Positions 16,549-40,724 of a DNA stretch of 64,000 nt are shown here, piece by piece. Made by a program: the position numbers and the translations under genes. The stretch lies in the NCBI RefSeq assembly GCF_964188315.1, contig NC_135658.1:75454001-75518000 (forward strand). The letters run 5' to 3'. The DNA is from Podarcis muralis. Its lineage: Eukaryota. Each line of letters starts with the position of its first letter. Position 1 is the first letter of the stretch. A model generated the notes under the pieces. The model was not told the origin of the DNA. It ran no database searches and was given only the letters and a program-made list of their open reading frames with translations.

Positions 16549-17088
16549 ATAAGAAGAAGGGAGAAGGGCAATGACAGGCCTAGACAGCATCTTGAGAAGT
16601 AGAGACGTCACCTTGCCAACAAAGTTCCGTATAGTTAAAGCCATGGTTTTCCCAGTAGTGATGTATGGAAGTGAGAGCTGGACCATAAAGAAGGCCGATC
16701 GCCAAAGAATTGATGCTTTTGAATTATGGTGCTGGAGAAGACTCTTGAGAGTCCCATGGACTGCAAGAAGATCAAACGCATCCATTCTTAAGGAAATCAG
16801 CCCTGAGTGCTCACTGGAAGGACAGATTGTGAAGCTGAGGCCCCAGTACTTTGGCCACCTCATGAGAAGAGAAGACTCCCTGGAGAAGACACTGATGCTG
16901 GGAAAGATGAAGGGCAGAAGGAGAAGGGGGCGACAGAGGACGAGATGGTTGGATAGTGTTTTCGAGGTTACCAGCATGAGTTTGACCAAACTGTGGGAGG
17001 TAGTGGAGGACAGAGGTGCCTGGCGTGCTCTGGTCCATGGGGTCACGAAGAGTCGGACACGACTAAACGACTAAACAACAACAACAAC
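16549..17088 (+). mobile_element. BovB (RTE clade) LINE, 5'-truncated 3' end
   Basis: Uninterrupted 167-aa frame 16571-17074 (..VKAMVFPVVMYGSESWTIKK..FELWCWRRLLRVPWTARRSN..HGVTKSRTRLND) typical of the BovB ORF C-terminus. (CAA)n tail. 13-bp TSD atgctactatgca (16536-16548 / 17089-17101). Confidence 0.95.
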
Positions 17089-29540: not shown

Positions 29541-32513
29541 CCCCCAATACCAAGCCTTTCTGGATCAGACCAAAGGCTTGACTAGTCCAGCATTCTCTAT
29601 TCACAGTGGCCAACCAGATGTCCATGGCATGCCTGCAAGGAGGCCGGACTGCAACAGTGTTCTTGCAACCTGCATTGTCCAGCAACTGGTATCTAGAGGC
29701 ATACTGCAGTAGTTATGTGCAGCCATCTTGCAAGAGCATCTTTGCATGGAGGACATCATCTGCATTAGGTGACGGAGAGGGAAGGCTTCAACAGTTGACT
29801 GGAGAGTGCCTTAAGTGCTTAGATTCCTTCAAAGACTGACTGCAGTATTTTTCTTTCAGACTTCAAGGAAAGAGAAAACCCAAGGGTCACTTGGCTTCCT
29901 CGCTCTATCACTTTAAACTCTGAAAAGAAACGTTTGGACTACTAGTCCTTTGTTAAGAGACATGCTCTTGAAGCCTGTGAAGTTACATGTAATAAATTTG
30001 CAGCCATAAATTATACCTGTATGGTTTCTCTGTGTGTTCATGCCCTCCCTTTATACCCCCAATCCCCATATGTACCCAGCTGAATATTCATTTAGGTTTG
30101 CCATGTCCTCATTCAGCAGAAACCCAAATGTGTTCTTTGTTAAAAAGAAATAATTACGATTCAGTGAATAGTTACTCAGATGTGTCTGCTTTATTTGTGG
30201 CATAAGTCACGATAAAGGGACAAGTTGTTGGGATGTGAATAGCTGCTCGGGGAGGATATATTTATTAGATATTATCCTTCCTTCCTTACGTCTGTGAGTT
30301 CAGCAGCTTAAGAGGGAAGCTGTCCCCATCAGTACAACATAGAGGCAGCCATTTTGTTGTGCATGCAATGGCCCTCAGCACATAGAAGCACACATGAAGT
30401 AGCATGGTTCCTGCACCATTTTAAAAAGCACTTTATCAGGCATGGCAGAAGTGCTGTGCTTTCAAGCTGCTCCAGGCCTCAGCTTTAAACTGCTTAAAGC
30501 AGCAGAAGTGGAGATGCAGAACTGCCCTTGGTACAACTCATATGGACTCCTCACTTATTATTTTTTTAATTACTGTTTTTATCTCCAGATTTTTTAAGAT
30601 TTTCCTGGAATCATCCTAAAAATCTCCCTGGGACATGATTTAAGACGTACGTGAACGAAATCAGAACAAGAAGAACTAATATGGATTCTGTCTGCCTCTG
30701 GGATAGATTCTGTCCATCAAGTGATTGACAGATTAATGGCCCCACAAACCTGTCAGAAATGACCCAGAGAGAGTGGGCCAGTTCTGGATTTGGCCCACCA
30801 TTACACAATAATCCAAGAGTAGAGTAGGGTGAACTATTTTGATATAGGTCAAAAAGTCTTTAAAACTGTTCGAAAATTCAAACTTTGAAAGATATCCATC
30901 TATCTGGACACCTAAAAGTAAACACGTGTGGCACATTATTCCTACATAATTGTTTCAGAATTACCCACATTGTAGAACATGGAAGCACTTCCTGCACCAC
31001 AGGAAATGGTAGAAGTGACTATACAATTCTAGAGATTGGAAAGTGTCAGACCCTTGGGTTCCAGAAGGAACATAATAAATATGTTGTTGCACCTCACCAC
31101 AATCTCCAAGCAGTGCAAGATTCCAGGGATTCCAGTTGCTTCCAGGGTTGGGTTTCCTCAGAATGAGGGAGAGAGGAAGCTGATATATGGTTTATTTATA
31201 CACATACATGTATATGAATCTCATTTCTTTTTTTAAAAATTGAGTTTGACTGGATCCAATAATTAGAACAGGGTTCCGGCATATAGCCTATGCCCACCCA
31301 AACTAACAACAGTATTTTCAACACACAGTAGACTTTAGTGGCAGAAGCCTCTTGCACACACGAGGTACGTATTAATTAAAACGACAGCTTTCAGTTCAAC
31401 TTCAACTATGGGCAAATCCTCCTGTTCATTCCTGGGGAAGTGAATCACAGCCCAGTCGCTAAAGGGAACAGAACAGAGGATGACAACACTTTTTTTAAAA
31501 AAGGAGAAACAAAGCTCTCTAATGGTCAAGCCCTGTTCCTTAATTGTCAAAGACTGGTGGAAGCCATCCTGTGGTTTTTCAGTTAACTTGGCGAGCAAAA
31601 CACAATTTCATCTCCATCACGGGGCCACATGAAACTGAACTAGTAATGTATATTAAAACCTTGCAGGAGGTTCCAAAACGCCATCTTGGTTTTATCTCAT
31701 AGGGATCTAAAAGATATTTGAAGTTGTACATTTCAAACTCACATGCAGAAAACCTGAGACGTAAACACTTCGGTATGTTAATTTCAACATATCTTTCTTC
31801 TAATGAAAGCATCTCCCATCAAATTAGAGGGTTGAAGGTACGGGTGGTGAAGCTGCAAACCGAAACATATCACCTCCATCTGCCTCAGCCATTACCGTGC
31901 GAACTGTACGCATTAAGGTTGTGGTCCTAAGTGTGCTTATTTGAAAGCAAATCAACTGCTGTCAGCAAGAACGACTTGCAAGCAAATCTGGCTAGGATTG
32001 CATTCTGCAAGAAGCTGATTCACATTGGCGCACACTCCTAACTGTGATATTACTTGGCTGCTTCCAAAGCTAGCTCAAGACATTTCTGGTAAAATGATTG
32101 GAAAGCTTGTTACAATCAAGCAGCAGATAATTTTGGTCAACTAAAACAAATTTTGAAACCTGAAGTGAAAGACAAGATGCTGCCCGGCCTGCTCCATTCT
32201 ACATACCAAAATCTAGCAGGCTGGCATTTTAATCTTACCTCAGTACTGATGAGATAGTACTGTCCACCTTGCCTGCGGGCAGCCAGCTAGCTTAGGGGGC
32301 ACAGAGCAGGCTGCATGGAAAACACAAACAGCTCTGTACCCCAAGGTGGCTGTCTTTGTCTGATGCTAGGGGCCACCACCTCTAGCTACTCCACCATTAT
32401 CAAGCATATCTGGGGCTTATTAGATAATAGAGCACACAATACCTGCTGGATGAGATCAGTCACAGCCCAAGGTCATTACAAGAATTGCGCTACTGCAGGG
32501 TCAAGAATGTTGA

Positions 32514-32873
32514 GGGACGCGGGTGGCGCTGTGGGTAAAACCTCAGTGCCTAGGACTTGCCGATCGCATGGTCGGCGGTTCGAATCCCCGCGGCGGGGTG
32601 CACTCCCGTCGTTCGGTCCCAGCGCCTACCAACCTAGCAGTTCAAAAGCACCTCCGGGTGCAAGTAGATAAATAGGGACCGCTTACCAGCGGGAAGGTAA
32701 ACGGCGTTCCGTGTGCTGCGCTGGCTCGCCAGATGCAGCTTGTCACGCTGGCCACGTGACCCGGAAGTGTCTGCGGACAGCGCTGGCTCCCGGCCTATAG
32801 AGTGAGATGAGCGCACAACCCTAGAGTCTGGCAAGACTGGCCCGTACGGGCAGGGGTACCTTTACCTTTACCT
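32514..32873 (+). mobile_element. Sauria SINE, full length
   Basis: Complete head to (ACCTTT)n tail; 11-bp TSD agggtcaagaa (32497-32507 / 32874-32884). Confidence 0.93.
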
Positions 32874-33108
32874 AGGGTCAAGAAGGTGGTGAAGCAAGCA
32901 ATCAAGCTGGCCAAGTTCATAGGTCAGTGGCTGGGAACCCAGAGGTCTTAAAAATAACAGCTCAATTGCGTCACAAAACAACTTGTGTGGATCTGTAATG
33001 GAAGGTCATACAAGTAGGAAATGTATTATAGCTAGTTCACAGGTCATTAGACACAACCGGTAAGGCTAATTAAAAGCATACATTTCTCTGTACATTATAG
33101 AATTTGCC

Positions 33109-33167
33109 TTTATTTTATTTTAACATTTAAAACATTTTAACATTATTTTAACATTTTAACATTTATT
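33109..33167 (-). terminator. Poly(A) signals of H2A copy A
   Basis: AATAAA on the minus strand at 33162-33167, 33114-33119 and 33109-33114. No histone stem-loop seen after the stop. Confidence 0.6.
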
Positions 33168-33313
33168 TAAACATCTAAAGTTTTTGTTTTTGTTTTGTTT
33201 TTTACAACAGACCATACTAATGATGAATGCCCCAAAGAACAAAAGCTAAGCTTCTGACAATATAACCTTTCTGGCAGAGTCTGTTCTTGCAAGATACTGA
33301 AATGCTGAAAGTT

Positions 33314-33727
33314 TTATAATTCCTGGGATTCGGGGTGTCCTGTGGCTTCCTTACGCTGCAGAGTCTTCTTGGGAATAAGCTGGGTATGGATGTTGGGGAG
33401 AACTCCACCTTCCGCAATGGTCACATGTGCAAACAGCTTGTTCAACTCATCATCGCTTCTGATCGCCAACTGGATGTGGCGTGGCCCAATTCGTTGCTTC
33501 TTGTTCTCATGAGCAGCATTTCCCGCCAGCTCCAGTAGCTCTGCAGTCAGATATTCCAACACGGCAGCCATGTACACCAAGGCGCCAACACCCACTCTTT
33601 CTGCGTACCGACCCCGTCTCAAAAGACGTCCGATGCGGCCCACTGGGAACTGCAAGCCAGCTCTTGCACTTTTGCTTTTTTTTACCTTGATTGCAGGCTT
33701 TGCCGGCTTCTTGCCCCGCCCAGACAT
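33314..33727 (-). CDS. Divergent histone H2A variant, copy A (137 aa, C-terminal SQEL)
   Basis: Intact [68 protein letters not shown]. Polypyrimidine acceptor tgtag|GATCCAAGATG just upstream (exon starts 33735). Confidence 0.93.
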
Positions 33728-35034
33728 CTTGGATCCTACAAACAAGAGAGGAGAGCCCAACTCCACTACACAATGCAAATGGCTTTGTGAGGTGTCCAAA
33801 GCCTAGTTGACCTTCCTGCAATTTGGAAGGAAGAGTATTTGGAGAACCAAACGCCTAAGAATTTTCTGTAATAATGACCTAGGATGTGGCCTTAAGATTT
33901 ACATTCTTCTAAGCAGACTGGTTTTCTGCCAAATCAAGTTCAGCCATTTTAGGACCAGGTCAGCCAAAGAGGAGCTCTACACCAGTTGCTGGACTCCAAT
34001 TCCCATCAGCCATAGCAACTACGATCCAGGCTGAAGGATTGTAGGCCAACATCATCTGCATACCATCCAACATTTCTCCGATGAACATAAGGACGTCTCA
34101 TTCCATAATGATGATTTTACTATTTATACTCCATGCTTCTAATAGATATAAAAAATATAATAAAACCTTAAACAACCTTCCCTATACAGGATTAACTTCA
34201 GATGGCTTGGGGGTTGGATAGCTCAGTACCTTCCAACATTTCTCCAATTAAAATAGGGACATCCTAAGGAAAAATGGGACATTCCAGGATTAAGTAAGAA
34301 ACTGGGATGCTTTTCTAAATCGGGAACGTCCCTGGAACACAATAGAAACACAATAGAAATAGAAGGCCTGCATCCAAAAGGGCACCATGTTTGCTAACCC
34401 TGTTTAAAACAATGCTACCACCCCATAGTAAGGTAGAAAGCTAGGAAGAAGGAATTTTTGCCACTGATAGCACAAAGTTTGTTCAGTCAGTAGCAAAAAG
34501 TGCTAGGACAAAAAGCTGCTGGAGAATTCTGCTTCATCAAAAAAAGATGTCAGTGTCATATACCCACTTAGTAATTCTTTTAAAAATTATATAATTTTTA
34601 TTCTCTAAAATACAGCTACATGGTGTTAAGTCAATGCAGGAGCTATGCCTCTTTAGTAGGAATGCTATTGTACACGTCCAATGGTGGCTTGCTCCTCAGA
34701 CCTTAGAAGGCCTTATGTCTCACCATACAGATAAAAATTTCATCTGCTATATTTCTTAAAAAACATGATTAGCCTACCATTAAAGGCTAAACAGGGTTTC
34801 CCACCCCCCTAAAAAGCTTTTAAAAATTAAAAAAGGAAAGGAAAATCTAACAGCAATCAGTAGTACACATAATATACGTGTGCTAATATACGGTATATTA
34901 TTAAGCATAATGTATTTATTATTCATAACATATTATCTTTAAACATAACATAGGTAATACTTATATGTATTACTCTTATATTAGAAACTAATTAAACCAC
35001 TTGCATTTTTTTTCATTTCAAAAAAGCCACTCAC

Positions 35035-35170
35035 CTTCTTATTACAGCAGACAACTACAAAGACAAGAGTTTTCTCCTCCTTTGACATAACCCTCTTTTT
35101 AAACCAATTTGTTCAGAACAGCTGCATCCAATTTGTCAGTATTTCTGATTTTAATGGATACCAATCCTTT
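35035..35170 (-). promoter_or_regulatory. Promoter and non-coding exon 1 of H2A copy A
   Basis: Donor AAG|gtgagtgg (exon end 35035), TTTAAAA box 35097-35103, CAGCTG 35119-35124. Alignable to the copy B promoter at 38250-38480. Confidence 0.7.
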
Positions 35171-35790
35171 TAATTTAAAGAAGTCCCATTCTGATCAATA
35201 GGGTTTGAGAGGGTATTTTACCACAATTATGACACTTTCAGAAAGCTAATTTTAATTCTCAAGGGAAGTAATAGAACCGTTCTATTCTGCCTTGGTTAGA
35301 CCACATTCAATATGTTTTCCACCTACCAAGGAAACTTTCCACTGAGAGATGGAAATAGAGATATGGATAACAGCTGAGTTTTATATGTTAAACAATGGAG
35401 GATAAACTATGGTATGTTTATTTTACCCCTGCAGTCCCAATGACAACCTGAAACCTGCACAGAACCTGGTGGAGCCTACAGTAATTTGAACATCTGCTAT
35501 CTCCTCTCATGGCCCGTTTTAAGATTATGGGCTCCTCCATACTTATATTGAGCATTTATTATGATTGGTTTTAATGTTATGACAGCCATATCATATCAAA
35601 GCAGAGCAAACAGAAATGGACCTTGGTTTTAGAAGTTATCTTAAGAGCACTACACACTTTCTCTCTTTCAAGTATCGCCCACCCAGACTTTTTGGGGTCT
35701 CTTTTTGTCTCTCCTCAACTGTAGCAAGCTGATTAGCAATTTCATTTCAGCTCAAGTTACCTCAGTAACTTGAGCCAATCTCCCTCCCTA

Positions 35791-36031
35791 AAAGGTAAAG
35801 GGACCCCTGATCATTAGGTCCAGTCGTGGCCGACTCTGGGGTTGCGGCGCTCATCTCGCTTTATTGGCCAGGGGAGCCAGCGTACAGCTTCCAGGTCATG
35901 TGGCCAGCATGACTAAGCCGCTTCTGGCGAACCAGAGCAGCGCACGGAAACGCTGTTTACCTTCCCATCGGAGCGGTACCTATTTATCTCTGGTTTGCCA
36001 GAAGCGGCTTAGTCATGCTGGCCACATGACC
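35791..36031 (-). mobile_element. 5'-truncated Sauria SINE ending in an inverted duplication
   Basis: SINE 3' half to 35988, then 35988-36031 is the reverse complement of 35894-35937. Confidence 0.85.
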
Positions 36032-36537
36032 CATATGTGTAAGAGATTCAGGAACTAAAGTATTTACCATCACAAAAGAATGGCCCAGGTTGAGCAATGA
36101 TTGAACATTACTGGGTAGCCTGACAGACAGGTTTTCTGCTGTAGACCGTCCCCCTGTGATGTATGTATGATGTTTTAGGAGGTGGTCTTGAGCTACAGGG
36201 AAGGCAATTCCAAAAGTCTATATAAGAGCTTGCACACCATTGTTCAGGGTTCCTCTCCTCCCTCCCTGCGTGGGGGGAGTGGGGGACCCTGTTGCAACAG
36301 TTTAATAAAGATCATGCTTACTAGCTGCTTTGCTTCTCAATATTCTCTGGCTGGCCTCTGTTATTTTCTCCTACCAATAGAAAACCTACATAAGGACTCT
36401 ATATGGGCTCTTTGATACCCCATAAGGGAAAAGGGGCAGTTTTTTCTTATAACAGGGTTGTTACCGGTATCTGGTGCTTGCTTTCAAATGATGCATCAGT
36501 AGGTAGCAACAAAGCGCAGAGTGGAAGCTTGTGTATC

Positions 36538-36580
<43 letters not shown>

Positions 36581-36640
36581 TGCATTATTTATACCCTGCC
36601 CGTCTGGCTGGGTTTCCCCAGCCACTCTGGGCGGCTCCTG
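36538..36640 (-). mobile_element. (AAT)n tract plus L2-type LINE 3' end
   Basis: (AAT)n followed by tttataccctgcccgtctggctgggtttccccagccactctgggcggc; similar motif at ~44745-44782. Confidence 0.55.
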
Positions 36641-38249
36641 ACAGAGGACTAAAAACAGAATAAAACTTCAAACATTAAAAACTTCTCTAAAAATAGATTA
36701 CAGCAAAAGTGACAAAAAATCTCGTGGCACTTGGAAGGCCTCAGTAAATCTGTTAGTCTTTTAATAGTGCCACAAAGTTTGGTTTAGCCACTGATACAAT
36801 GCAGCAGAAGCAGCTGACTTGTAAGCTTGTGCCATAATGGTGAGGTATGTCCTACCGTGGAAGGACGTCTGGATCCAGAATTGGCCTCCACAGTCACACA
36901 CACACACACACACACACACACGGTTAAGACCATATTCATGGAAGACAATCTTACTCAGCTATGAGTGATCACCAAAGAAGAAGACAATGTCAATGGTGAA
37001 GGCTTTAAAGTGCCACAAAACTCCCAGAAGCTTTCCCTAAGTAAAACCAGCCCTCCCATTGGGTAGAGTGAGGCTATGGCCTCAGGCAGTTCATTTTGGG
37101 GGTGTAATAAAATGGCAGCAAATGGTAATGTATTCAGTATGCTAAATAGCAGGACCAAATAAAGTGATGTAGAAGTGTGGCAGCTGGTATTTTAGTTCTC
37201 TATATCTCTTCAGGTTCGGGGGAGAGTACAAAAAAAAGTTGTAACCGTGAGATGAGCTTGTTGACATCAGCCTATTATTTTTTTAATCCCCATTTACCTC
37301 ATCCCCTGCTTTGTGCAACATTGTGTATGAAGAAAAAGTGCAAATAATTAAATGATATTAATCTTGTATTTTTATATTATTGTAACTCTCCTTGGAAACA
37401 TACAGTAAAGTTTGGAACAAAGAAATAAATGAAGAGCTATGAGATCAGCTTATAGACATCAGCCTAATTTATGTACTGTACTTTTGTTTTGTTTTGTTTT
37501 GTTTTTACCTTCTTCCTTCTATCCACTTGCTTTGTGGAACATCTTCCCAGATGAAGAGTTCTGGAGAAAAATAGTTGCCACTCTTCTGTGACATTTTGGT
37601 TGGTGCCAGTAAAGGTAGTGCCCAATGGTGGATTTTGGAATGGTCCTGACCACATTTGTTAAAAGCCTAAATCCTGAGAGTAAGCCTCATTTAAATCAAT
37701 GGGGCTTGGTAGTAAATAAGGCAAGGGAAAGTAAAAAACAAACAAGCCACACGCCCAACTGGCTGAGTCTGCATTTAGTCACAAGGTGCTTCCAAATTAT
37801 AGGAGGCATTCAAGCGCATAACAGAAATTTAGGTTTGTGCAATTTAAGTGGATTAAAATACCCTGCTGCCATAACACAACATATCCCCTCATGGACTTTT
37901 TGCACTTTGTAAAGTGACAGGAAATGAATTGAAAAGTGTGAGAGGAATGAGTAATTAACAAGACATGTAAACACACAAGTAAATCAGGAGGAATAGTTTA
38001 TCCTCCATTTATTTAAAGATATGAAAAGGTGGCTCTTAGCCATGTTTGTTTCCATCTTTAAGTAAAAACCAAAGTTTCCTTGGTAGCTAGAAAATATATT
38101 TAGTGTTAATCATGCTATACCCTCCTTCAGAATTGAAATTTGCTTTCTGAAAGTGTGATCATCATTCTATTGAACAACCTACTGATCACAAGGGAACTTC
38201 TCTAAAGTGAGAGAATTGAGTTCTGCCACCAAAATAGCCAAGTTGAAAC

Positions 38250-38430
38250 CAATTCAGTCAGAACTACTGGGAAAGTGGATACAGCTGAGGGAACTTTCAT
38301 TCAAACACAGCTGATCAAATTCCCACATTAGCATCAACAGAGGAGTTTAAAATGAGAGCCATGTTCAAAAAGGAGAAAATTCTTTCGTTGACTGGAGACG
38401 AGTCATAACTCAAGTGTTTCACTGAAGGAG
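38250..38430 (+). promoter_or_regulatory. Promoter and non-coding exon 1 of H2A copy B
   Basis: CAGCTG at 38282 and 38308, TTTAAAA 38346-38352, donor GAG|gtgagtgg at 38431. Homologous to the copy A promoter. Confidence 0.7.
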
Positions 38431-38665
38431 GTGAGTGGTTTTATTTTTAAAAACATGCTAGTGGTTTAATTATAAGGTAAGATTAATAATAAATATTAGG
38501 TTTAAAGAGCTAGCTATGTATGCTGCTGAGGGCTACTGGAATTCCATCCCTCCCTTGACTTGCATAAGCCTTTTAGAAAAATGTGATGTATAAAGCCAAA
38601 AATGCTCATATTGGCCTGCCAACAGTAGATTAATCAGTAGTATGAGTTTTAGAAATCCAGTAGAT

Positions 38666-38801
38666 CAGACATCCCCAACCTGCGGCCCTCCAGATGTTTT
38701 GGCTTACAACTCCCATGATCCCTAGCTAGCAAGACCAGTGGCCAGGGATGATGGGAATTGTAGTCCAAAACATCTGGAGGGCCGAAGGTTGGGGATTCCT
38801 G
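38666..38801. mobile_element. Palindromic hAT MITE in H2A copy B intron
   Basis: Near-complete self-complementarity; exact 8-bp TSD cagtagat (38658-38665 / 38802-38809). Confidence 0.88.
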
Positions 38802-39019
38802 CAGTAGATGAAGCTTTTCATCGAATGGTGAGCCATTAGGGTCTCTAATGCCTTGAGAACAAGCCACATGATAATATTCCTAATAGGGTGGCATGGCTCC
38901 TGCATTGGTTTAACACCATGTAGCTGTGTGTTATCAGGGGCAAAACTCTTCGATTTCCCTAGCTTTCTATCACTTACCATGGAGTAGTGGGATTGTTTTG
39001 AAAACAGGGATAGCCCAAC

Positions 39020-39187
39020 CAGTGGCGTAGCGTGGGTTGTCAGCACCCGGGGCAAGGCAAGTAATTTGCGCCCCCAACCTGTGGATTTGCGCCCCCTAAC
39101 CCGTGGATTTGTGCCCCCTAACCCTAACCCCCAGATGTTGCGCCCGGTGTGGCCGGCCCCCCCTGCACCCCCCACGCTACGCCACTG
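39020..39187. mobile_element. hAT MITE in H2A copy B intron
   Basis: 17-bp perfect TIR cagtggcgtagcgtggg; exact 8-bp TSD agcccaac (39012-39019 / 39188-39195); internal ~21-bp tandem repeats. Confidence 0.9.
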
Positions 39188-39508
39188 AGCCCAACTGGTG
39201 CCCTTTGGATGTTTTCGGCCTGCAGCCCACTTCATCCTTCAGCCTGGGTCATAGTTGCTGTGGCTGATGGGAATTGGAGTCCAGCAACTGCTGTGGGGCT
39301 TTCCTTTGGCTGACCTGATTCTAACATGACTGAACTAGCAGAAAATTGGTCTGTTTATCTTAAGGCCACATTCTAGGTCCTTATTACAGCAAATTCTTAG
39401 GCGCTTGGTTCTCTGATTACTCTTCCTTCCATATTGTTAGCAATATGACAAAACCATTTGCCTTGTGTAATGAAGGTGGGCTCTCCTCTCTTACTTGTAG
39501 GATCCAGG

Positions 39509-39904
39509 ATGTCTGGGCGTGGCAAGAAGCCTGCAAAGCCTGCAACCAAGGAACAAAAAAACAAGAGTGCAAGAGCTGGCTTGCAGTTCCCAGTGGGCCG
39601 CATTGGACGTCTTTTGAGACGGGGTCGGTACGCAGAAAGAGTGGGTGTTGGCGCCTCGGTGTACTTGGCTGCCGTGTTGGAATATCTGACTGCAGAGCTA
39701 CTGGAGCTGGCGGGAAATGCTGCTCATGAGAACAAGAGGCAACGAATTGGGCCACGCCACATCCAGTTGGCGATCAGAAGCGATGATGAGTTGAACAAGC
39801 TGTTTGCACATGTGACCATTGCGGAAGGTGGAGTTCTCCCCCACATCAATGCTTTGCTTCTTCCAAAGAAAACAGCACCGTCCACTGTTCCCCAGGAGGA
39901 ATGA
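39509..39904 (+). CDS. Divergent histone H2A variant, copy B (131 aa, C-terminal PQEE)
   Basis: Intact ORF with the same histone fold as copy A; acceptor ttacttgtag|GATCCAGGATG (exon starts 39501). Confidence 0.93.
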
Positions 39905-40007
39905 AGGGGACCTGACCTCATGTGACATTTCTGTCTCTTACTGTCTGAAAAAGCTCCTTGTCCTTTTCATGTAGCACTTTCACTAGGAAGAACTCTATAT
40001 TTGTGTG

Positions 40008-40035
40008 TTTTAATAATATTTTTTGTAATAATAAA
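40008..40035 (+). terminator. CPE-like element and poly(A) signal of H2A copy B
   Basis: TTTTAAT 40008-40014, AATAAA 40030-40035; no stem-loop after the stop. Confidence 0.65.
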
Positions 40036-40574
40036 TTGTGCAATATAAAGCTTGGGCATGGTTTCTTTGTGAGCAAAGAACGGATTCAAAACTTTTTTAA
40101 AAATAAAAACTGGGATGGGAGCTTGTTGTGCAACTAGAGGCCTTTTGCAGGCCCGATGGTATGGTATGTGGAATGAAGCTGTACTCTTCACCGATTATTC
40201 AAGGCCTGCTAGTGGAATTAGATGACCATAATCGGGCTACATGATGTTGGGAATAAACTCAGGTTATGGTGTATTGTCATCTTAATGAACTTTCCTGGGA
40301 GGACATTAGCTACAAGCTTGCGACAACTGCCTCTGAACAGCAAGTGATTTGTTTCCACATACCTAAGGTGTCCAAATGCTGTGCGATGATGTGCATTCAG
40401 TGCTTGTTGCTGGCACCATTTTGGTCACCCCCATGTTCACCCTTTCCCACACTGTTAATTTAACATGCATTCTGACAAGAGTGCACTACGAGAACAGGAT
40501 GCTGGTTAGATGAACCTTAGATCTGACCCAGCAGGGCACACTGAAATATCCTGCACCTTTGTGCCCCTGTACTG

Positions 40575-40724
40575 AAAGCGGTACCTATTTATCTACTTGC
40601 ACTTTGACGTGCTTTCGAACTGCTCCGAGCAACAGGAGCTCCCATCACGGGGATTTGAACTGCCGACCTTCTGATTGGCAAGTCCTAGGCTCTGTGGTTT
40701 AACCCACAGCGCCACCCTCGTCCC
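40575..40724 (-). mobile_element. Sauria SINE, 5' portion only
   Basis: Head and first half of the SINE with internal deletions. Confidence 0.8.

What the first reader, a model, noticed from the sequence alone, without database searches (positions are those of the whole stretch)
33314..33328. H2A.X-like SQEL terminus on copy A versus PQEE on copy B: one base toggles a DNA-damage phosphosite
Seen: A ends TCC CAG GAA TTA TAA (SQEL*) and B ends CCC CAG GAG GAA TGA (PQEE*, 39890-39904); Ser and Pro differ by one nucleotide. Established: S-Q-E-hydrophobic-COOH is the ATM/ATR/DNA-PK site (SQEY vertebrate H2A.X, SQEF Xenopus H2A.X-F, SQEL yeast H2A). MDC1 BRCT binding favours a terminal aromatic residue, and Y142 is itself regulatory. 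Inference: A is a gamma-phosphorylatable variant with a yeast-type end lacking the Tyr switch and B is a non-phosphorylatable sister, so their ratio could tune damage or meiotic signalling.
Basis: partly seen in the sequence, partly recalled or inferred. Interest (0 to 1): 0.75.

Follow-up and report, generated by a model that had tools for sequence, protein, structure and literature searches.

The report
Wall-lizard H2A.X-F histone ending SQEL
Copy A is the wall lizard's version of a known, very old egg-type DNA-damage histone (H2A.X-F, normally ending SQEF) whose last residue changed from Phe to Leu only in Podarcis, while copy B is an old neighbouring sister gene whose own site has decayed, so the two ends are not one-base variants of each other.

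Summary
The codons are as described: A (minus strand) ends SQEL*, B (plus strand) ends PQEE*. Both are intact H2A genes under purifying selection, with poly(A) signals and no histone stem-loop.

The reading is only partly right. A belongs to the vertebrate H2A.X-F family. Of 44 named relatives from fishes to birds, 39 end SQEF, so the Ser-Gln site is deeply conserved. The terminal Leu is a Podarcis novelty: TTA against TTC in Lacerta agilis, and Zootoca also has SQEF.

B is not a one-base sister of A. The two tails and 3'UTRs are unalignable (29-33% identity) but match their own orthologs (88-100%). A B-type gene lies next to an SQEF-type gene in lizards, a turtle and a bird. B-type tails carry an internal SQE plus an extension. 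That Ser is lost in all lacertids, and B's end differs even within Podarcis (a stop here; a 4-nt frameshift in P. raffonei). The shared histone-fold body is kept alike by gene conversion.

Published human data (H2AX Y142F binds MDC1; Y142L is phosphorylated but forms no MDC1 foci) make F-to-L the interesting change.

The parts
33317..33727 (-). Gene A coding sequence: 137-aa H2A.X-F-type histone H2A, single coding exon; stop at 33314-33316
   Evidence: ORF and translation. Pfam Histone and Histone_H2A_C. 99% identical to the Podarcis muralis/raffonei/lilfordi protein P0005. dN/dS 0.32 against the L. agilis ortholog.
33314..33328 (-). Terminal S134-Q-E-L137 codons plus stop (TCC CAG GAA TTA TAA). 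Candidate PIKK (ATM/ATR/DNA-PK) site; the last codon is TTA (Leu) where L. agilis has TTC (Phe).
   Evidence: 39 of 44 named family members end SQEF.
33362..33667 (-). A, codons 21-122: histone-fold body homogenised with B (gene-conversion tract)
   Evidence: 95% DNA identity to B here, against 73% upstream and 29-48% downstream. Synonymous divergence A/B is 0.08, against 0.17-0.19 between orthologs.
33728..33760 (-). Polypyrimidine tract plus AG eight bases before A's ATG: inferred 3' splice site of a 5'UTR intron
   Evidence: The sequence CTCTCCTCTCTTGTTTGTAG|GATCCAAG-ATG is conserved in all six lacertid genes. An analogous tract plus AG lies upstream of the ATG in the turtle, bird and fish genes. 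Not confirmed by RNA.
33162..33167 (-). AATAAA poly(A) signal of gene A, 147 nt after the stop
   Evidence: No histone 3' stem-loop in 32500-40600.
39509..39901 (+). Gene B coding sequence: 131-aa paralog, head-to-head with A; stop at 39902-39904
   Evidence: Identical tail in P. muralis P0125. dN/dS 0.18 against L. agilis B.
39890..39904 (+). P-Q-E-E plus stop (CCC CAG GAG GAA TGA). The Ser is lost, and the stop TGA sits where L. agilis has CTA (Leu).
39905..39925 (+). Relic of B's former C-terminal extension, now untranslated: AGG GGA CCT GAC CTC ATG TGA = RGPDLM*, still in frame behind the new stop
   Evidence: Identical to the coding end of L. agilis B (LRGPDLM*). P. raffonei has a 4-nt insertion at the same spot, giving PYKGT*.
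39569..39874 (+). B, codons 21-122: the partner of the gene-conversion tract
40030..40035 (+). AATAAA poly(A) signal of gene B, 126 nt after the stop

Best explanation
A and B are the wall lizard's two members of the vertebrate H2A.X-F lineage. These are replication-independent H2A variants with poly(A) signals and probably a 5'UTR intron.

A is the direct ortholog of the SQEF-ending H2A.X-F genes of fishes, amphibians, turtles, crocodilians, birds and other squamates. It keeps the C-terminal Ser-Gln that ATM/ATR/DNA-PK-type kinases phosphorylate in H2A.X proteins. In the Podarcis stem lineage one base (TTC to TTA) changed the last residue from Phe to Leu.

B descends from a duplication at least as old as sauropsids. 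In B-type genes the SQE motif lies a few residues inside the C-terminus, so it cannot present a free carboxylate three residues after the Ser. It has been lost repeatedly. In lacertids the Ser is Pro, and in Podarcis the residues after QEE have been cut off or frameshifted.

Gene conversion keeps the histone-fold bodies of the neighbours nearly identical, so only the two tails differ.

Inferred, not shown: A is phosphorylated at S134. By analogy with human H2AX Y142L against Y142F, its Leu end would be read poorly by an MDC1-type BRCT reader. B would be a site-less partner.
For: Identity
- Pfam H2A domains in both proteins.
- A-type and B-type rows form one clade apart from canonical H2A, SH-aLRT 99.
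- 39 of 44 named A-type tails end SQEF; SQEL occurs only in the two Podarcis entries.
- The literature defines H2A.X-F by SQEF (PMC4191874) and reports a separate chordate H2A.X-F gene clade (PMC12153100).

F-to-L
- TTA in the window and P. raffonei, TTC in L. agilis, with the rest of the tail and the 3'UTR 94-100% identical.
- Zootoca isoform X1 ends SQEF.
- The same protein is recorded for P. muralis, P. raffonei and P. lilfordi.

Old paralogy
- A B-type and an A-type gene are adjacent in L. agilis, P. raffonei, Chelonia and Chordeiles.
- Paralog tails are 29-33% identical and 3'UTRs 46-48%, against 88-100% between orthologs.
- B-type tail motifs are shared across orders.

Decay of B
-.

Gene conversion and constraint
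-.

Non-canonical expression signals
- No stem-loop.
- AATAAA signals and a polypyrimidine-AG before the ATG.

Functional analogy
- PMC11143218: human Y142F is MDC1-proficient; Y142L forms gamma-H2AX foci but no MDC1 foci.
Against: - No expression evidence: zero reads over A in four RNA runs of the same species label. Tissues are unknown and about 6-13% of each run was read.
- Xenopus H2A.X-F itself was not among the listed hits and is not in my tree. The link to it rests on the shared SQEF end, the salamander and fish members, a weak tail match to PDB chain 7kbd_C, and the published clade.
- Fish loci show no shared neighbours within 10 kb, so positional orthology is shown only within sauropsids.
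- The protein tree groups A with B inside lineages. I explain this by gene conversion, but taken literally it fits repeated duplication.
- Phosphorylation, reader binding and any effect of Leu are untested in lizards, and lizard MDC1 may have co-evolved.
Confidence: 0.8

Rival explanations
1. One reading: A and B are close sister copies whose ends differ essentially by one nucleotide (Ser/Pro). That would make an on/off pair of a yeast-type phosphosite whose expression ratio tunes damage or meiotic signalling.
For: TCC and CCC differ by one base. The bodies are 90% identical in protein. B has no SQ or TQ in its tail.
Against: - Tails and 3'UTRs of A and B are unalignable: 29-33% and 46-48% identity, with different lengths.
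- Each tail is conserved with its own ortholog.
- The pair exists in a turtle and a bird.
- The high body identity comes from gene conversion.
- B's Pro is shared by Lacerta, and Zootoca has PREE, so it is old and arose within an internal motif.
- There are no expression data for any ratio.
Confidence: 0.05
2. A and B arose by independent, lineage-specific duplications of a single H2A.X-F gene in each reptile group, as the protein tree literally shows. On this view they are not one ancient duplication followed by gene conversion.
For: In the tree, lacertid A and B form one clade (99), as do Hemicordylus A with B (95) and Rhineura A with B (94). The bird A-type rows nest among the bird B-type rows.
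Against: - B-type tail motifs are shared across orders: LRGPD in Rhineura and lacertids; ASQEE in turtles, Hemicordylus and Pogona; PSQE in birds, tuatara and Phrynocephalus.
- The genes are adjacent in four sauropsid genomes.
- Within lacertids, upstream flanks differ by about 25% and the tails and 3'UTRs are unalignable, while core synonymous divergence is only 0.08-0.16. That is the signature of conversion limited to the body.
Confidence: 0.1
3. One or both genes are silent relics, and the F-to-L change and the unstable end of B are neutral decay with no signalling meaning.
For: No RNA reads on A in four runs. There are three different B ends among close relatives. F-to-L removes the family's most conserved terminal residue.
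Against: - Both reading frames are intact in the Podarcis genomes examined: A is identical in three other species, and B is intact in all four.
- dN/dS is 0.10-0.32 against Lacerta and 0.06-0.14 within Podarcis.
- The splice-site-like tract and poly(A) signals are conserved.
- The RNA runs are of unknown tissue, and Xenopus H2A.X-F is strictly maternal (PMC4191874), so somatic samples would be blank anyway.
Confidence: 0.05

Closest known systems
H2A.X-F (H2A.X.3) of Xenopus laevis and the chordate H2A.X-F clade
   Same: - An H2A core with a divergent lysine-rich N-tail.
- A C-terminal S-Q-E-hydrophobic-COOH with no Tyr.
- A gene separate from canonical H2A.X.
- The family end SQEF is found in the closest relatives of A, Lacerta and Zootoca.
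   Different: - The last residue is Leu, not Phe, in Podarcis.
- Maternal (egg and early-embryo) expression and checkpoint-independent phosphorylation are known for Xenopus only and are untested here.
- The published survey searched with the pattern SQ[DE][FY], so it would not have retrieved an SQEL end.
Canonical H2A.X (H2A.X-Y, ...SQEY)
   Same: The Ser-Gln-Glu motif three residues from a free C-terminus, which is the PIKK target and BRCT docking site.
   Different: - There is no Tyr142 equivalent, so no WSTF/EYA switch.
- The linker lacks the GKK--Q residues that PMC11143218 links to MDC1-independent 53BP1 recruitment.
- A falls in a different clade from canonical-type H2A.
Yeast H2A (HTA1/HTA2, ...SQEL) and the human H2AX Y142L mutant
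   Same: An identical terminal tetrapeptide, SQEL. In human cells Y142L is still phosphorylated at the Ser.
   Different: The resemblance is convergent. The lizard Leu derives from Phe within a vertebrate family. Whether lizard readers accept Leu is unknown. Human MDC1 foci do not form on Y142L, and yeast HTA1 restores 53BP1 foci in human H2AX-knockout cells only after L132Y.
Sauropsid 'histone H2A-beta, sperm-like' / bird 'H2AL' or 'H2AX, partial' database entries (B-type)
   Same: B shares their body, their position next to the SQEF gene, and their tail layout: PKKT, a short linker, (S/P)QE(E/Q), then an extension.
   Different: Lacertid B has Pro for Ser, and in this genome it has lost the extension to a stop. 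These entries have only automatic names, and I found no paper describing them as a class.

Membership tests
H2A.X-F (H2A.X.3) | Histone H2A fold with docking domain | tested here: met
   Pfam PF00125 and PF16211 above their cut-offs for both A and B. The best PDB matches are H2A chains.
H2A.X-F (H2A.X.3) | Ser-Gln-(Glu/Asp) ending three residues before the free C-terminus | tested here: met
   A ends S134-Q-E-L137-stop. B does not meet this: it ends PQEE with no SQ or TQ in the tail.
H2A.X-F (H2A.X.3) | Terminal residue Phe (SQEF), as the name defines it (PMC4191874) | tested here: not met
   Leu (TTA) in the window and in P. raffonei; the P. muralis and P. lilfordi proteins are identical to P. 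raffonei's. Phe in L. agilis (TTC), in Zootoca and in 39 of 44 named family members. By descent A is the ortholog. By the literal motif it is a derived member.
H2A.X-F (H2A.X.3) | Groups with other SQEF genes apart from canonical H2A; orthologous position | tested here: met
   The split from canonical H2A has SH-aLRT 99. There is the same head-to-head pair beside a Phosducin-family gene in L. agilis and P. raffonei, and adjacent pairs in a turtle and a bird. Xenopus itself was not in the tree, and fish synteny was uninformative.
H2A.X-F (H2A.X.3) | Maternal expression (oocyte, egg, early embryo) | tested here: inconclusive
   No reads on A in four RNA runs of unknown tissue. No gonad or embryo run could be identified.
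H2A.X-F (H2A.X.3) | Phosphorylation of the C-terminal Ser | not testable with these tools
   Needs phospho-mass-spectrometry or a kinase assay.
Canonical H2A.X (SQEY) | C-terminal Tyr (Y142) after SQE | tested here: not met
   The terminal residue is Leu in A and Glu in B.
Replication-dependent canonical H2A | 3' histone stem-loop instead of a poly(A) signal; canonical tails | tested here: not met
   No Rfam histone stem-loop hit in 32500-40600 at E up to 1. AATAAA lies 147 nt (A) and 126 nt (B) after the stops. The tails are divergent.

The most novel reading that the evidence does not exclude
Podarcis has naturally converted its only SQEF-type histone to SQEL. In human cells that end still gets phosphorylated but cannot recruit MDC1. 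Its sister gene B has no site at all. If lizard MDC1 behaves like human MDC1, wall lizards carry a germline or early-embryo H2A.X-F that signals without MDC1 docking, or whose reader has co-evolved. That would be a natural separation-of-function experiment on what H2A.X-F phosphorylation is for. Separately, the B-type genes would be an unnamed sauropsid-wide class of H2A.X-F-derived variants in which the SQE motif is capped by a C-terminal extension.
Probability: 0.25. Interest if true: 0.55.

Novelty: new member of a known kind. Interest (0 to 1): 0.35.

Why it matters
H2A.X-F is abundant in frog eggs, and its role is still unclear. Knowing that lizards, turtles, birds and crocodilians keep an ortholog, usually paired with a second decaying copy, widens the comparative base.

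The Podarcis Phe-to-Leu change touches the one residue that published human work singles out as deciding MDC1 docking. It offers a cheap natural test: peptide binding with lizard against human MDC1 BRCT.

The finding also corrects a tempting but wrong reading. Two similar paralogs whose ends look one base apart are in fact old genes with unrelated tails and a gene-converted body.

Tried and rejected
- **RNA evidence.** I laid four RNA runs on 33100-39099. Depth over gene A was zero. The only signal was partial matches on intergenic repeats, with 98% of the laid reads running on into unlike sequence. Tissues are coded and unknown, so this shows neither silence nor expression. B's coding region could not be included within the 6,000-letter limit and the single call allowed.
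- **Fish synteny.** The Polypterus and Alosa loci show no PDCL3 or NMS neighbour within 10 kb, so this was uninformative.
- **Zootoca isoform X2.** The exact look-up found nothing, so I could not see how its ...TLQTG end is spliced.
- **Shechter et al. 2009.** The paper that defined H2A.X-F is not held in the library. I relied on PMC4191874 and PMC12153100.
- **PDB search.** It returned only canonical H2A and H2AX names, plus a 139-aa Xenopus-type chain (7kbd_C) with a weak tail match, E 0.64. This is not evidence on its own.
- **Tail-restricted word search.** It found no lacertids beyond Podarcis, Lacerta and Zootoca, so the F-to-L change cannot be dated more finely.
- **A splice donor in A's tail.** I considered the CAGCGTAAGG stretch as a donor that would remove SQEL. 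It is not supported: the reading-frame arithmetic does not fit the Zootoca X2 end, and there are no RNA joints.

Full report
**Observation.** On the minus strand, window 33328-33314 reads TCC CAG GAA TTA TAA (S-Q-E-L-stop). It ends a 137-residue open reading frame, CDS 33317-33727. On the plus strand, 39890-39904 reads CCC CAG GAG GAA TGA (P-Q-E-E-stop). It ends a 131-residue frame, CDS 39509-39901. Both proteins match Pfam Histone and Histone_H2A_C above the curated cut-offs. The genes lie head to head about 5.8 kb apart.

**How A and B relate.** The proteins are 90% identical over residues 1-122, up to PKKT, and cannot be aligned after that. I measured DNA identity segment by segment:

| Segment | A vs B (same genome) | Window vs L. 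agilis orthologs |
|---|---|---|
| Upstream 400 nt | 73-78% | 85-94% |
| N-tail, codons 1-20 | 80-88% | 92-93% |
| Histone-fold body, codons 21-122 | 94-95% | 93-94% |
| Tail plus stop | 29-33% | 88-96% |
| 3'UTR | 47-48% | 93-94% |

The window against P. raffonei gives 93-100% for the tail and 97-98% for the 3'UTR. So the two C-termini are unrelated at any recent level. Placing SQEL over PQEE works only by anchoring on the stop codons.

Synonymous divergence between A and B in the body is 0.08 in this genome and 0.16 in L. agilis. Between orthologs it is 0.17-0.19. With flanks about 25% divergent and tails unalignable, this is the pattern of gene conversion confined to the histone fold.

**What A is.** The word search shows the window is from a Podarcis wall lizard. 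The window's own protein is P0003. P0005, 99% identical, is recorded for P. muralis, P. raffonei and P. lilfordi. The same search returned a large vertebrate family with the same lysine-rich N-tail (MSGRGKK...) and a C-terminus ending SQEF. Members include:
- ray-finned fishes: Alosa, Engraulis, Polypterus, Erpetoichthys, Acipenser;
- salamanders, turtles and Alligator;
- birds: Chordeiles, Merops;
- many squamates.

Of the 44 members I could name, 39 end SQEF, two end SLEF, one ends SQEV, and only the two Podarcis entries end SQEL. SQEF is the defining end of Xenopus H2A.X-F, also called H2A.X.3, a maternal histone that makes up more than half of egg H2A (PMC4191874). A 2025 survey reported that chordate H2A.X-F and H2A.X-Y are two separate gene clades, and that many species with both are not aquatic (PMC12153100). 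Its search pattern was SQ[DE][FY], which cannot retrieve an SQEL end. In my tree all A-type and B-type rows split from canonical H2A with SH-aLRT 99. A is therefore the Podarcis ortholog of H2A.X-F.

**The Leu is a Podarcis novelty.** L. agilis has the same head-to-head pair beside a Phosducin-family gene (PDCL3), and so does P. raffonei. Ortholog alignment shows A's tail and 3'UTR almost unchanged. The last codon is TTA (Leu) in the window and P. raffonei and TTC (Phe) in L. agilis. Zootoca isoform X1 also ends SQEF. No other lacertid ortholog is in the database. The change therefore lies on the Podarcis stem and is shared by all four Podarcis genomes on record.

**What B is.** B-type proteins occur in lizards, tuatara, turtles, crocodiles and birds. 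They lie next to the SQEF gene in L. agilis, P. raffonei, Chelonia and Chordeiles. The duplication is thus at least as old as sauropsids.
- **Tail layout.** B-type tails typically carry an internal SQE(E/Q) followed by three to nine more residues. Examples are turtles ...ASQEESSNY, birds ...PSQEQGGSQ, tuatara ...PSQEDSKK... and Hemicordylus ...ASQEEPSGSGF.
- **Loss of SQ.** 19 of 30 named B-type rows keep an SQ. It is gone in Crocodylus, Elgaria, Eublepharis, Varanus, Rhineura and all lacertids.
- **Instability in Podarcis.** L. agilis B ends PQEE-LRGPDLM. In this genome the Leu codon CTA is TGA, and the old RGPDLM-stop still follows in frame at 39905-39925. P. muralis B has the same 131-residue protein. 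P. raffonei has a 4-nt insertion at the same spot giving PYKGT, and P. lilfordi B has that same end.
- **Where the Ser-to-Pro change belongs.** It is a one-base change (TCC in Chelonia B; CCA or CCC in lacertids). It happened inside B's own lineage, in a motif that was not at the C-terminus.
- **Possible deep ancestry.** B's internal SQE may be the buried relic of the ancestral SQEF end. B-type rows nest within the family tree, and in turtles the motif lies at a similar distance from PKK. This is an inference only.

**The tree.** The protein tree groups A with B inside lineages: lacertids at 99, Hemicordylus at 95, Rhineura at 94. I attribute this to gene conversion of the body, for the reasons above. 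The rival reading, repeated independent duplication, is listed with what would decide it.

**Are the genes alive?**
- Both frames are intact in all four Podarcis genomes.
- dN/dS against L. agilis is 0.32 for A and 0.18 for B, or 0.23 and 0.10 in the body. Within Podarcis it is 0.06 and 0.14.
- Neither gene has a histone 3' stem-loop. Both have AATAAA 126-147 nt after the stop.
- Both have a polypyrimidine tract plus AG eight bases before the ATG. All six lacertid genes share it, and the turtle, bird and fish genes have an equivalent. That suggests a conserved 5'UTR intron.
- RNA support is missing. Four RNA runs with the same species label gave zero depth over A. Their tissues are unknown, only about 6-13% of each run was read, and the Xenopus counterpart is strictly maternal. 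This says little.

**Likely mechanism.**
- **Shown:** A keeps S-Q-E-hydrophobic-COOH. B has no SQ or TQ in its tail.
- **From established knowledge:** Ser-Gln is the ATM/ATR/DNA-PK consensus, and readers of the MDC1 BRCT type need the free carboxylate three residues after the phospho-Ser.
- **From PMC11143218:** in human H2AX-knockout cells, Y142F supports MDC1 foci. Y142L still forms gamma-H2AX foci but no MDC1 foci. SQEL fused to H2A.Z or macroH2A does not restore 53BP1 foci, and the partial MDC1-independent rescue needs the human GKK--Q linker, which A lacks.
- **Inferred:** A is phosphorylatable at S134. Its Podarcis-specific Leu would weaken MDC1-type docking unless the lizard reader has adapted. 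B is a site-less sister that shares the same nucleosome body.
- **No evidence:** that the A:B ratio tunes signalling.

**Verdict.** This is a derived member of a known family, not a new kind of system. The worthwhile residue is the terminal Phe-to-Leu change, not the Ser/Pro contrast.

Noticed in passing
L001:4724-5140, L002:8001-8411, L003:2389-2826, L004:6076-6471 (B-type genes): A sauropsid-wide second H2A.X-F-like paralog sits next to the SQEF gene. Its SQE(E/Q) motif is capped by a short C-terminal extension; bird versions end ...SQEQGGSQ. It carries only automatic names ('H2A-beta, sperm-like', 'H2AL', 'H2AX partial'), and I found no paper describing it as a class.
   Followed up: partly
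window 33362-33667 (-) and 39569-39874 (+): Concerted evolution: the histone-fold bodies of A and B have synonymous divergence 0.08, lower than between Podarcis and Lacerta orthologs (0.17-0.19), while the flanks are 25% or more divergent. Protein trees of this family therefore group paralogs by lineage and mislead about orthology.
   Followed up: yes
Zootoca vivipara P0011 (isoform X2, 126 aa) against P0126 (X1, 137 aa): An annotated Zootoca isoform replaces the last 13 residues, including SQEF, with ...TLQ-TG. That would be a splice form without the phosphosite. The look-up of its locus failed, and I could not find a fitting donor site in the Podarcis sequence.
   Followed up: partly
window 33380-33385 (-), residues T115-Q116 of A: A (Podarcis and Zootoca) has a Thr-Gln in the docking segment, [11 protein letters not shown]. 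agilis A and all the lacertid B proteins have Ala-Leu there. This is a second, unconserved S/T-Q dipeptide of unknown meaning.
   Followed up: no
window 33578-33580 (-) and 39665-39667 (+): This genome alone has Leu50 in A (Ser in every other lacertid A and B) and Leu53 in B (Met elsewhere), both in the GVGA-S-VY-M segment of the fold. These are private substitutions or assembly variants.
   Followed up: no
window 35700-36100, 36500-36700, 38700-39099: Intergenic repeats attract many partial RNA reads (98% run on into unlike sequence). The stretch 38692-38775 matches Rfam mir-5408 on both strands below the gathering score (about 50 bits against 90). These are probably a palindromic transposon-derived repeat family rather than local transcription.
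   Followed up: no
window 16571-17074 (+): A 167-aa ORF (it contains ...RRGRQRTRWLD...) looks from memory like the C-terminal part of an RTE/BovB-type LINE protein. No family scan was run on it.
   Followed up: no
L003 and L004 against the window: The gene pair is in tandem (B-type upstream, same strand) in the turtle and the bird but head to head in lacertids. An inversion of one copy therefore occurred somewhere on the squamate or lacertid line.
   Followed up: partly
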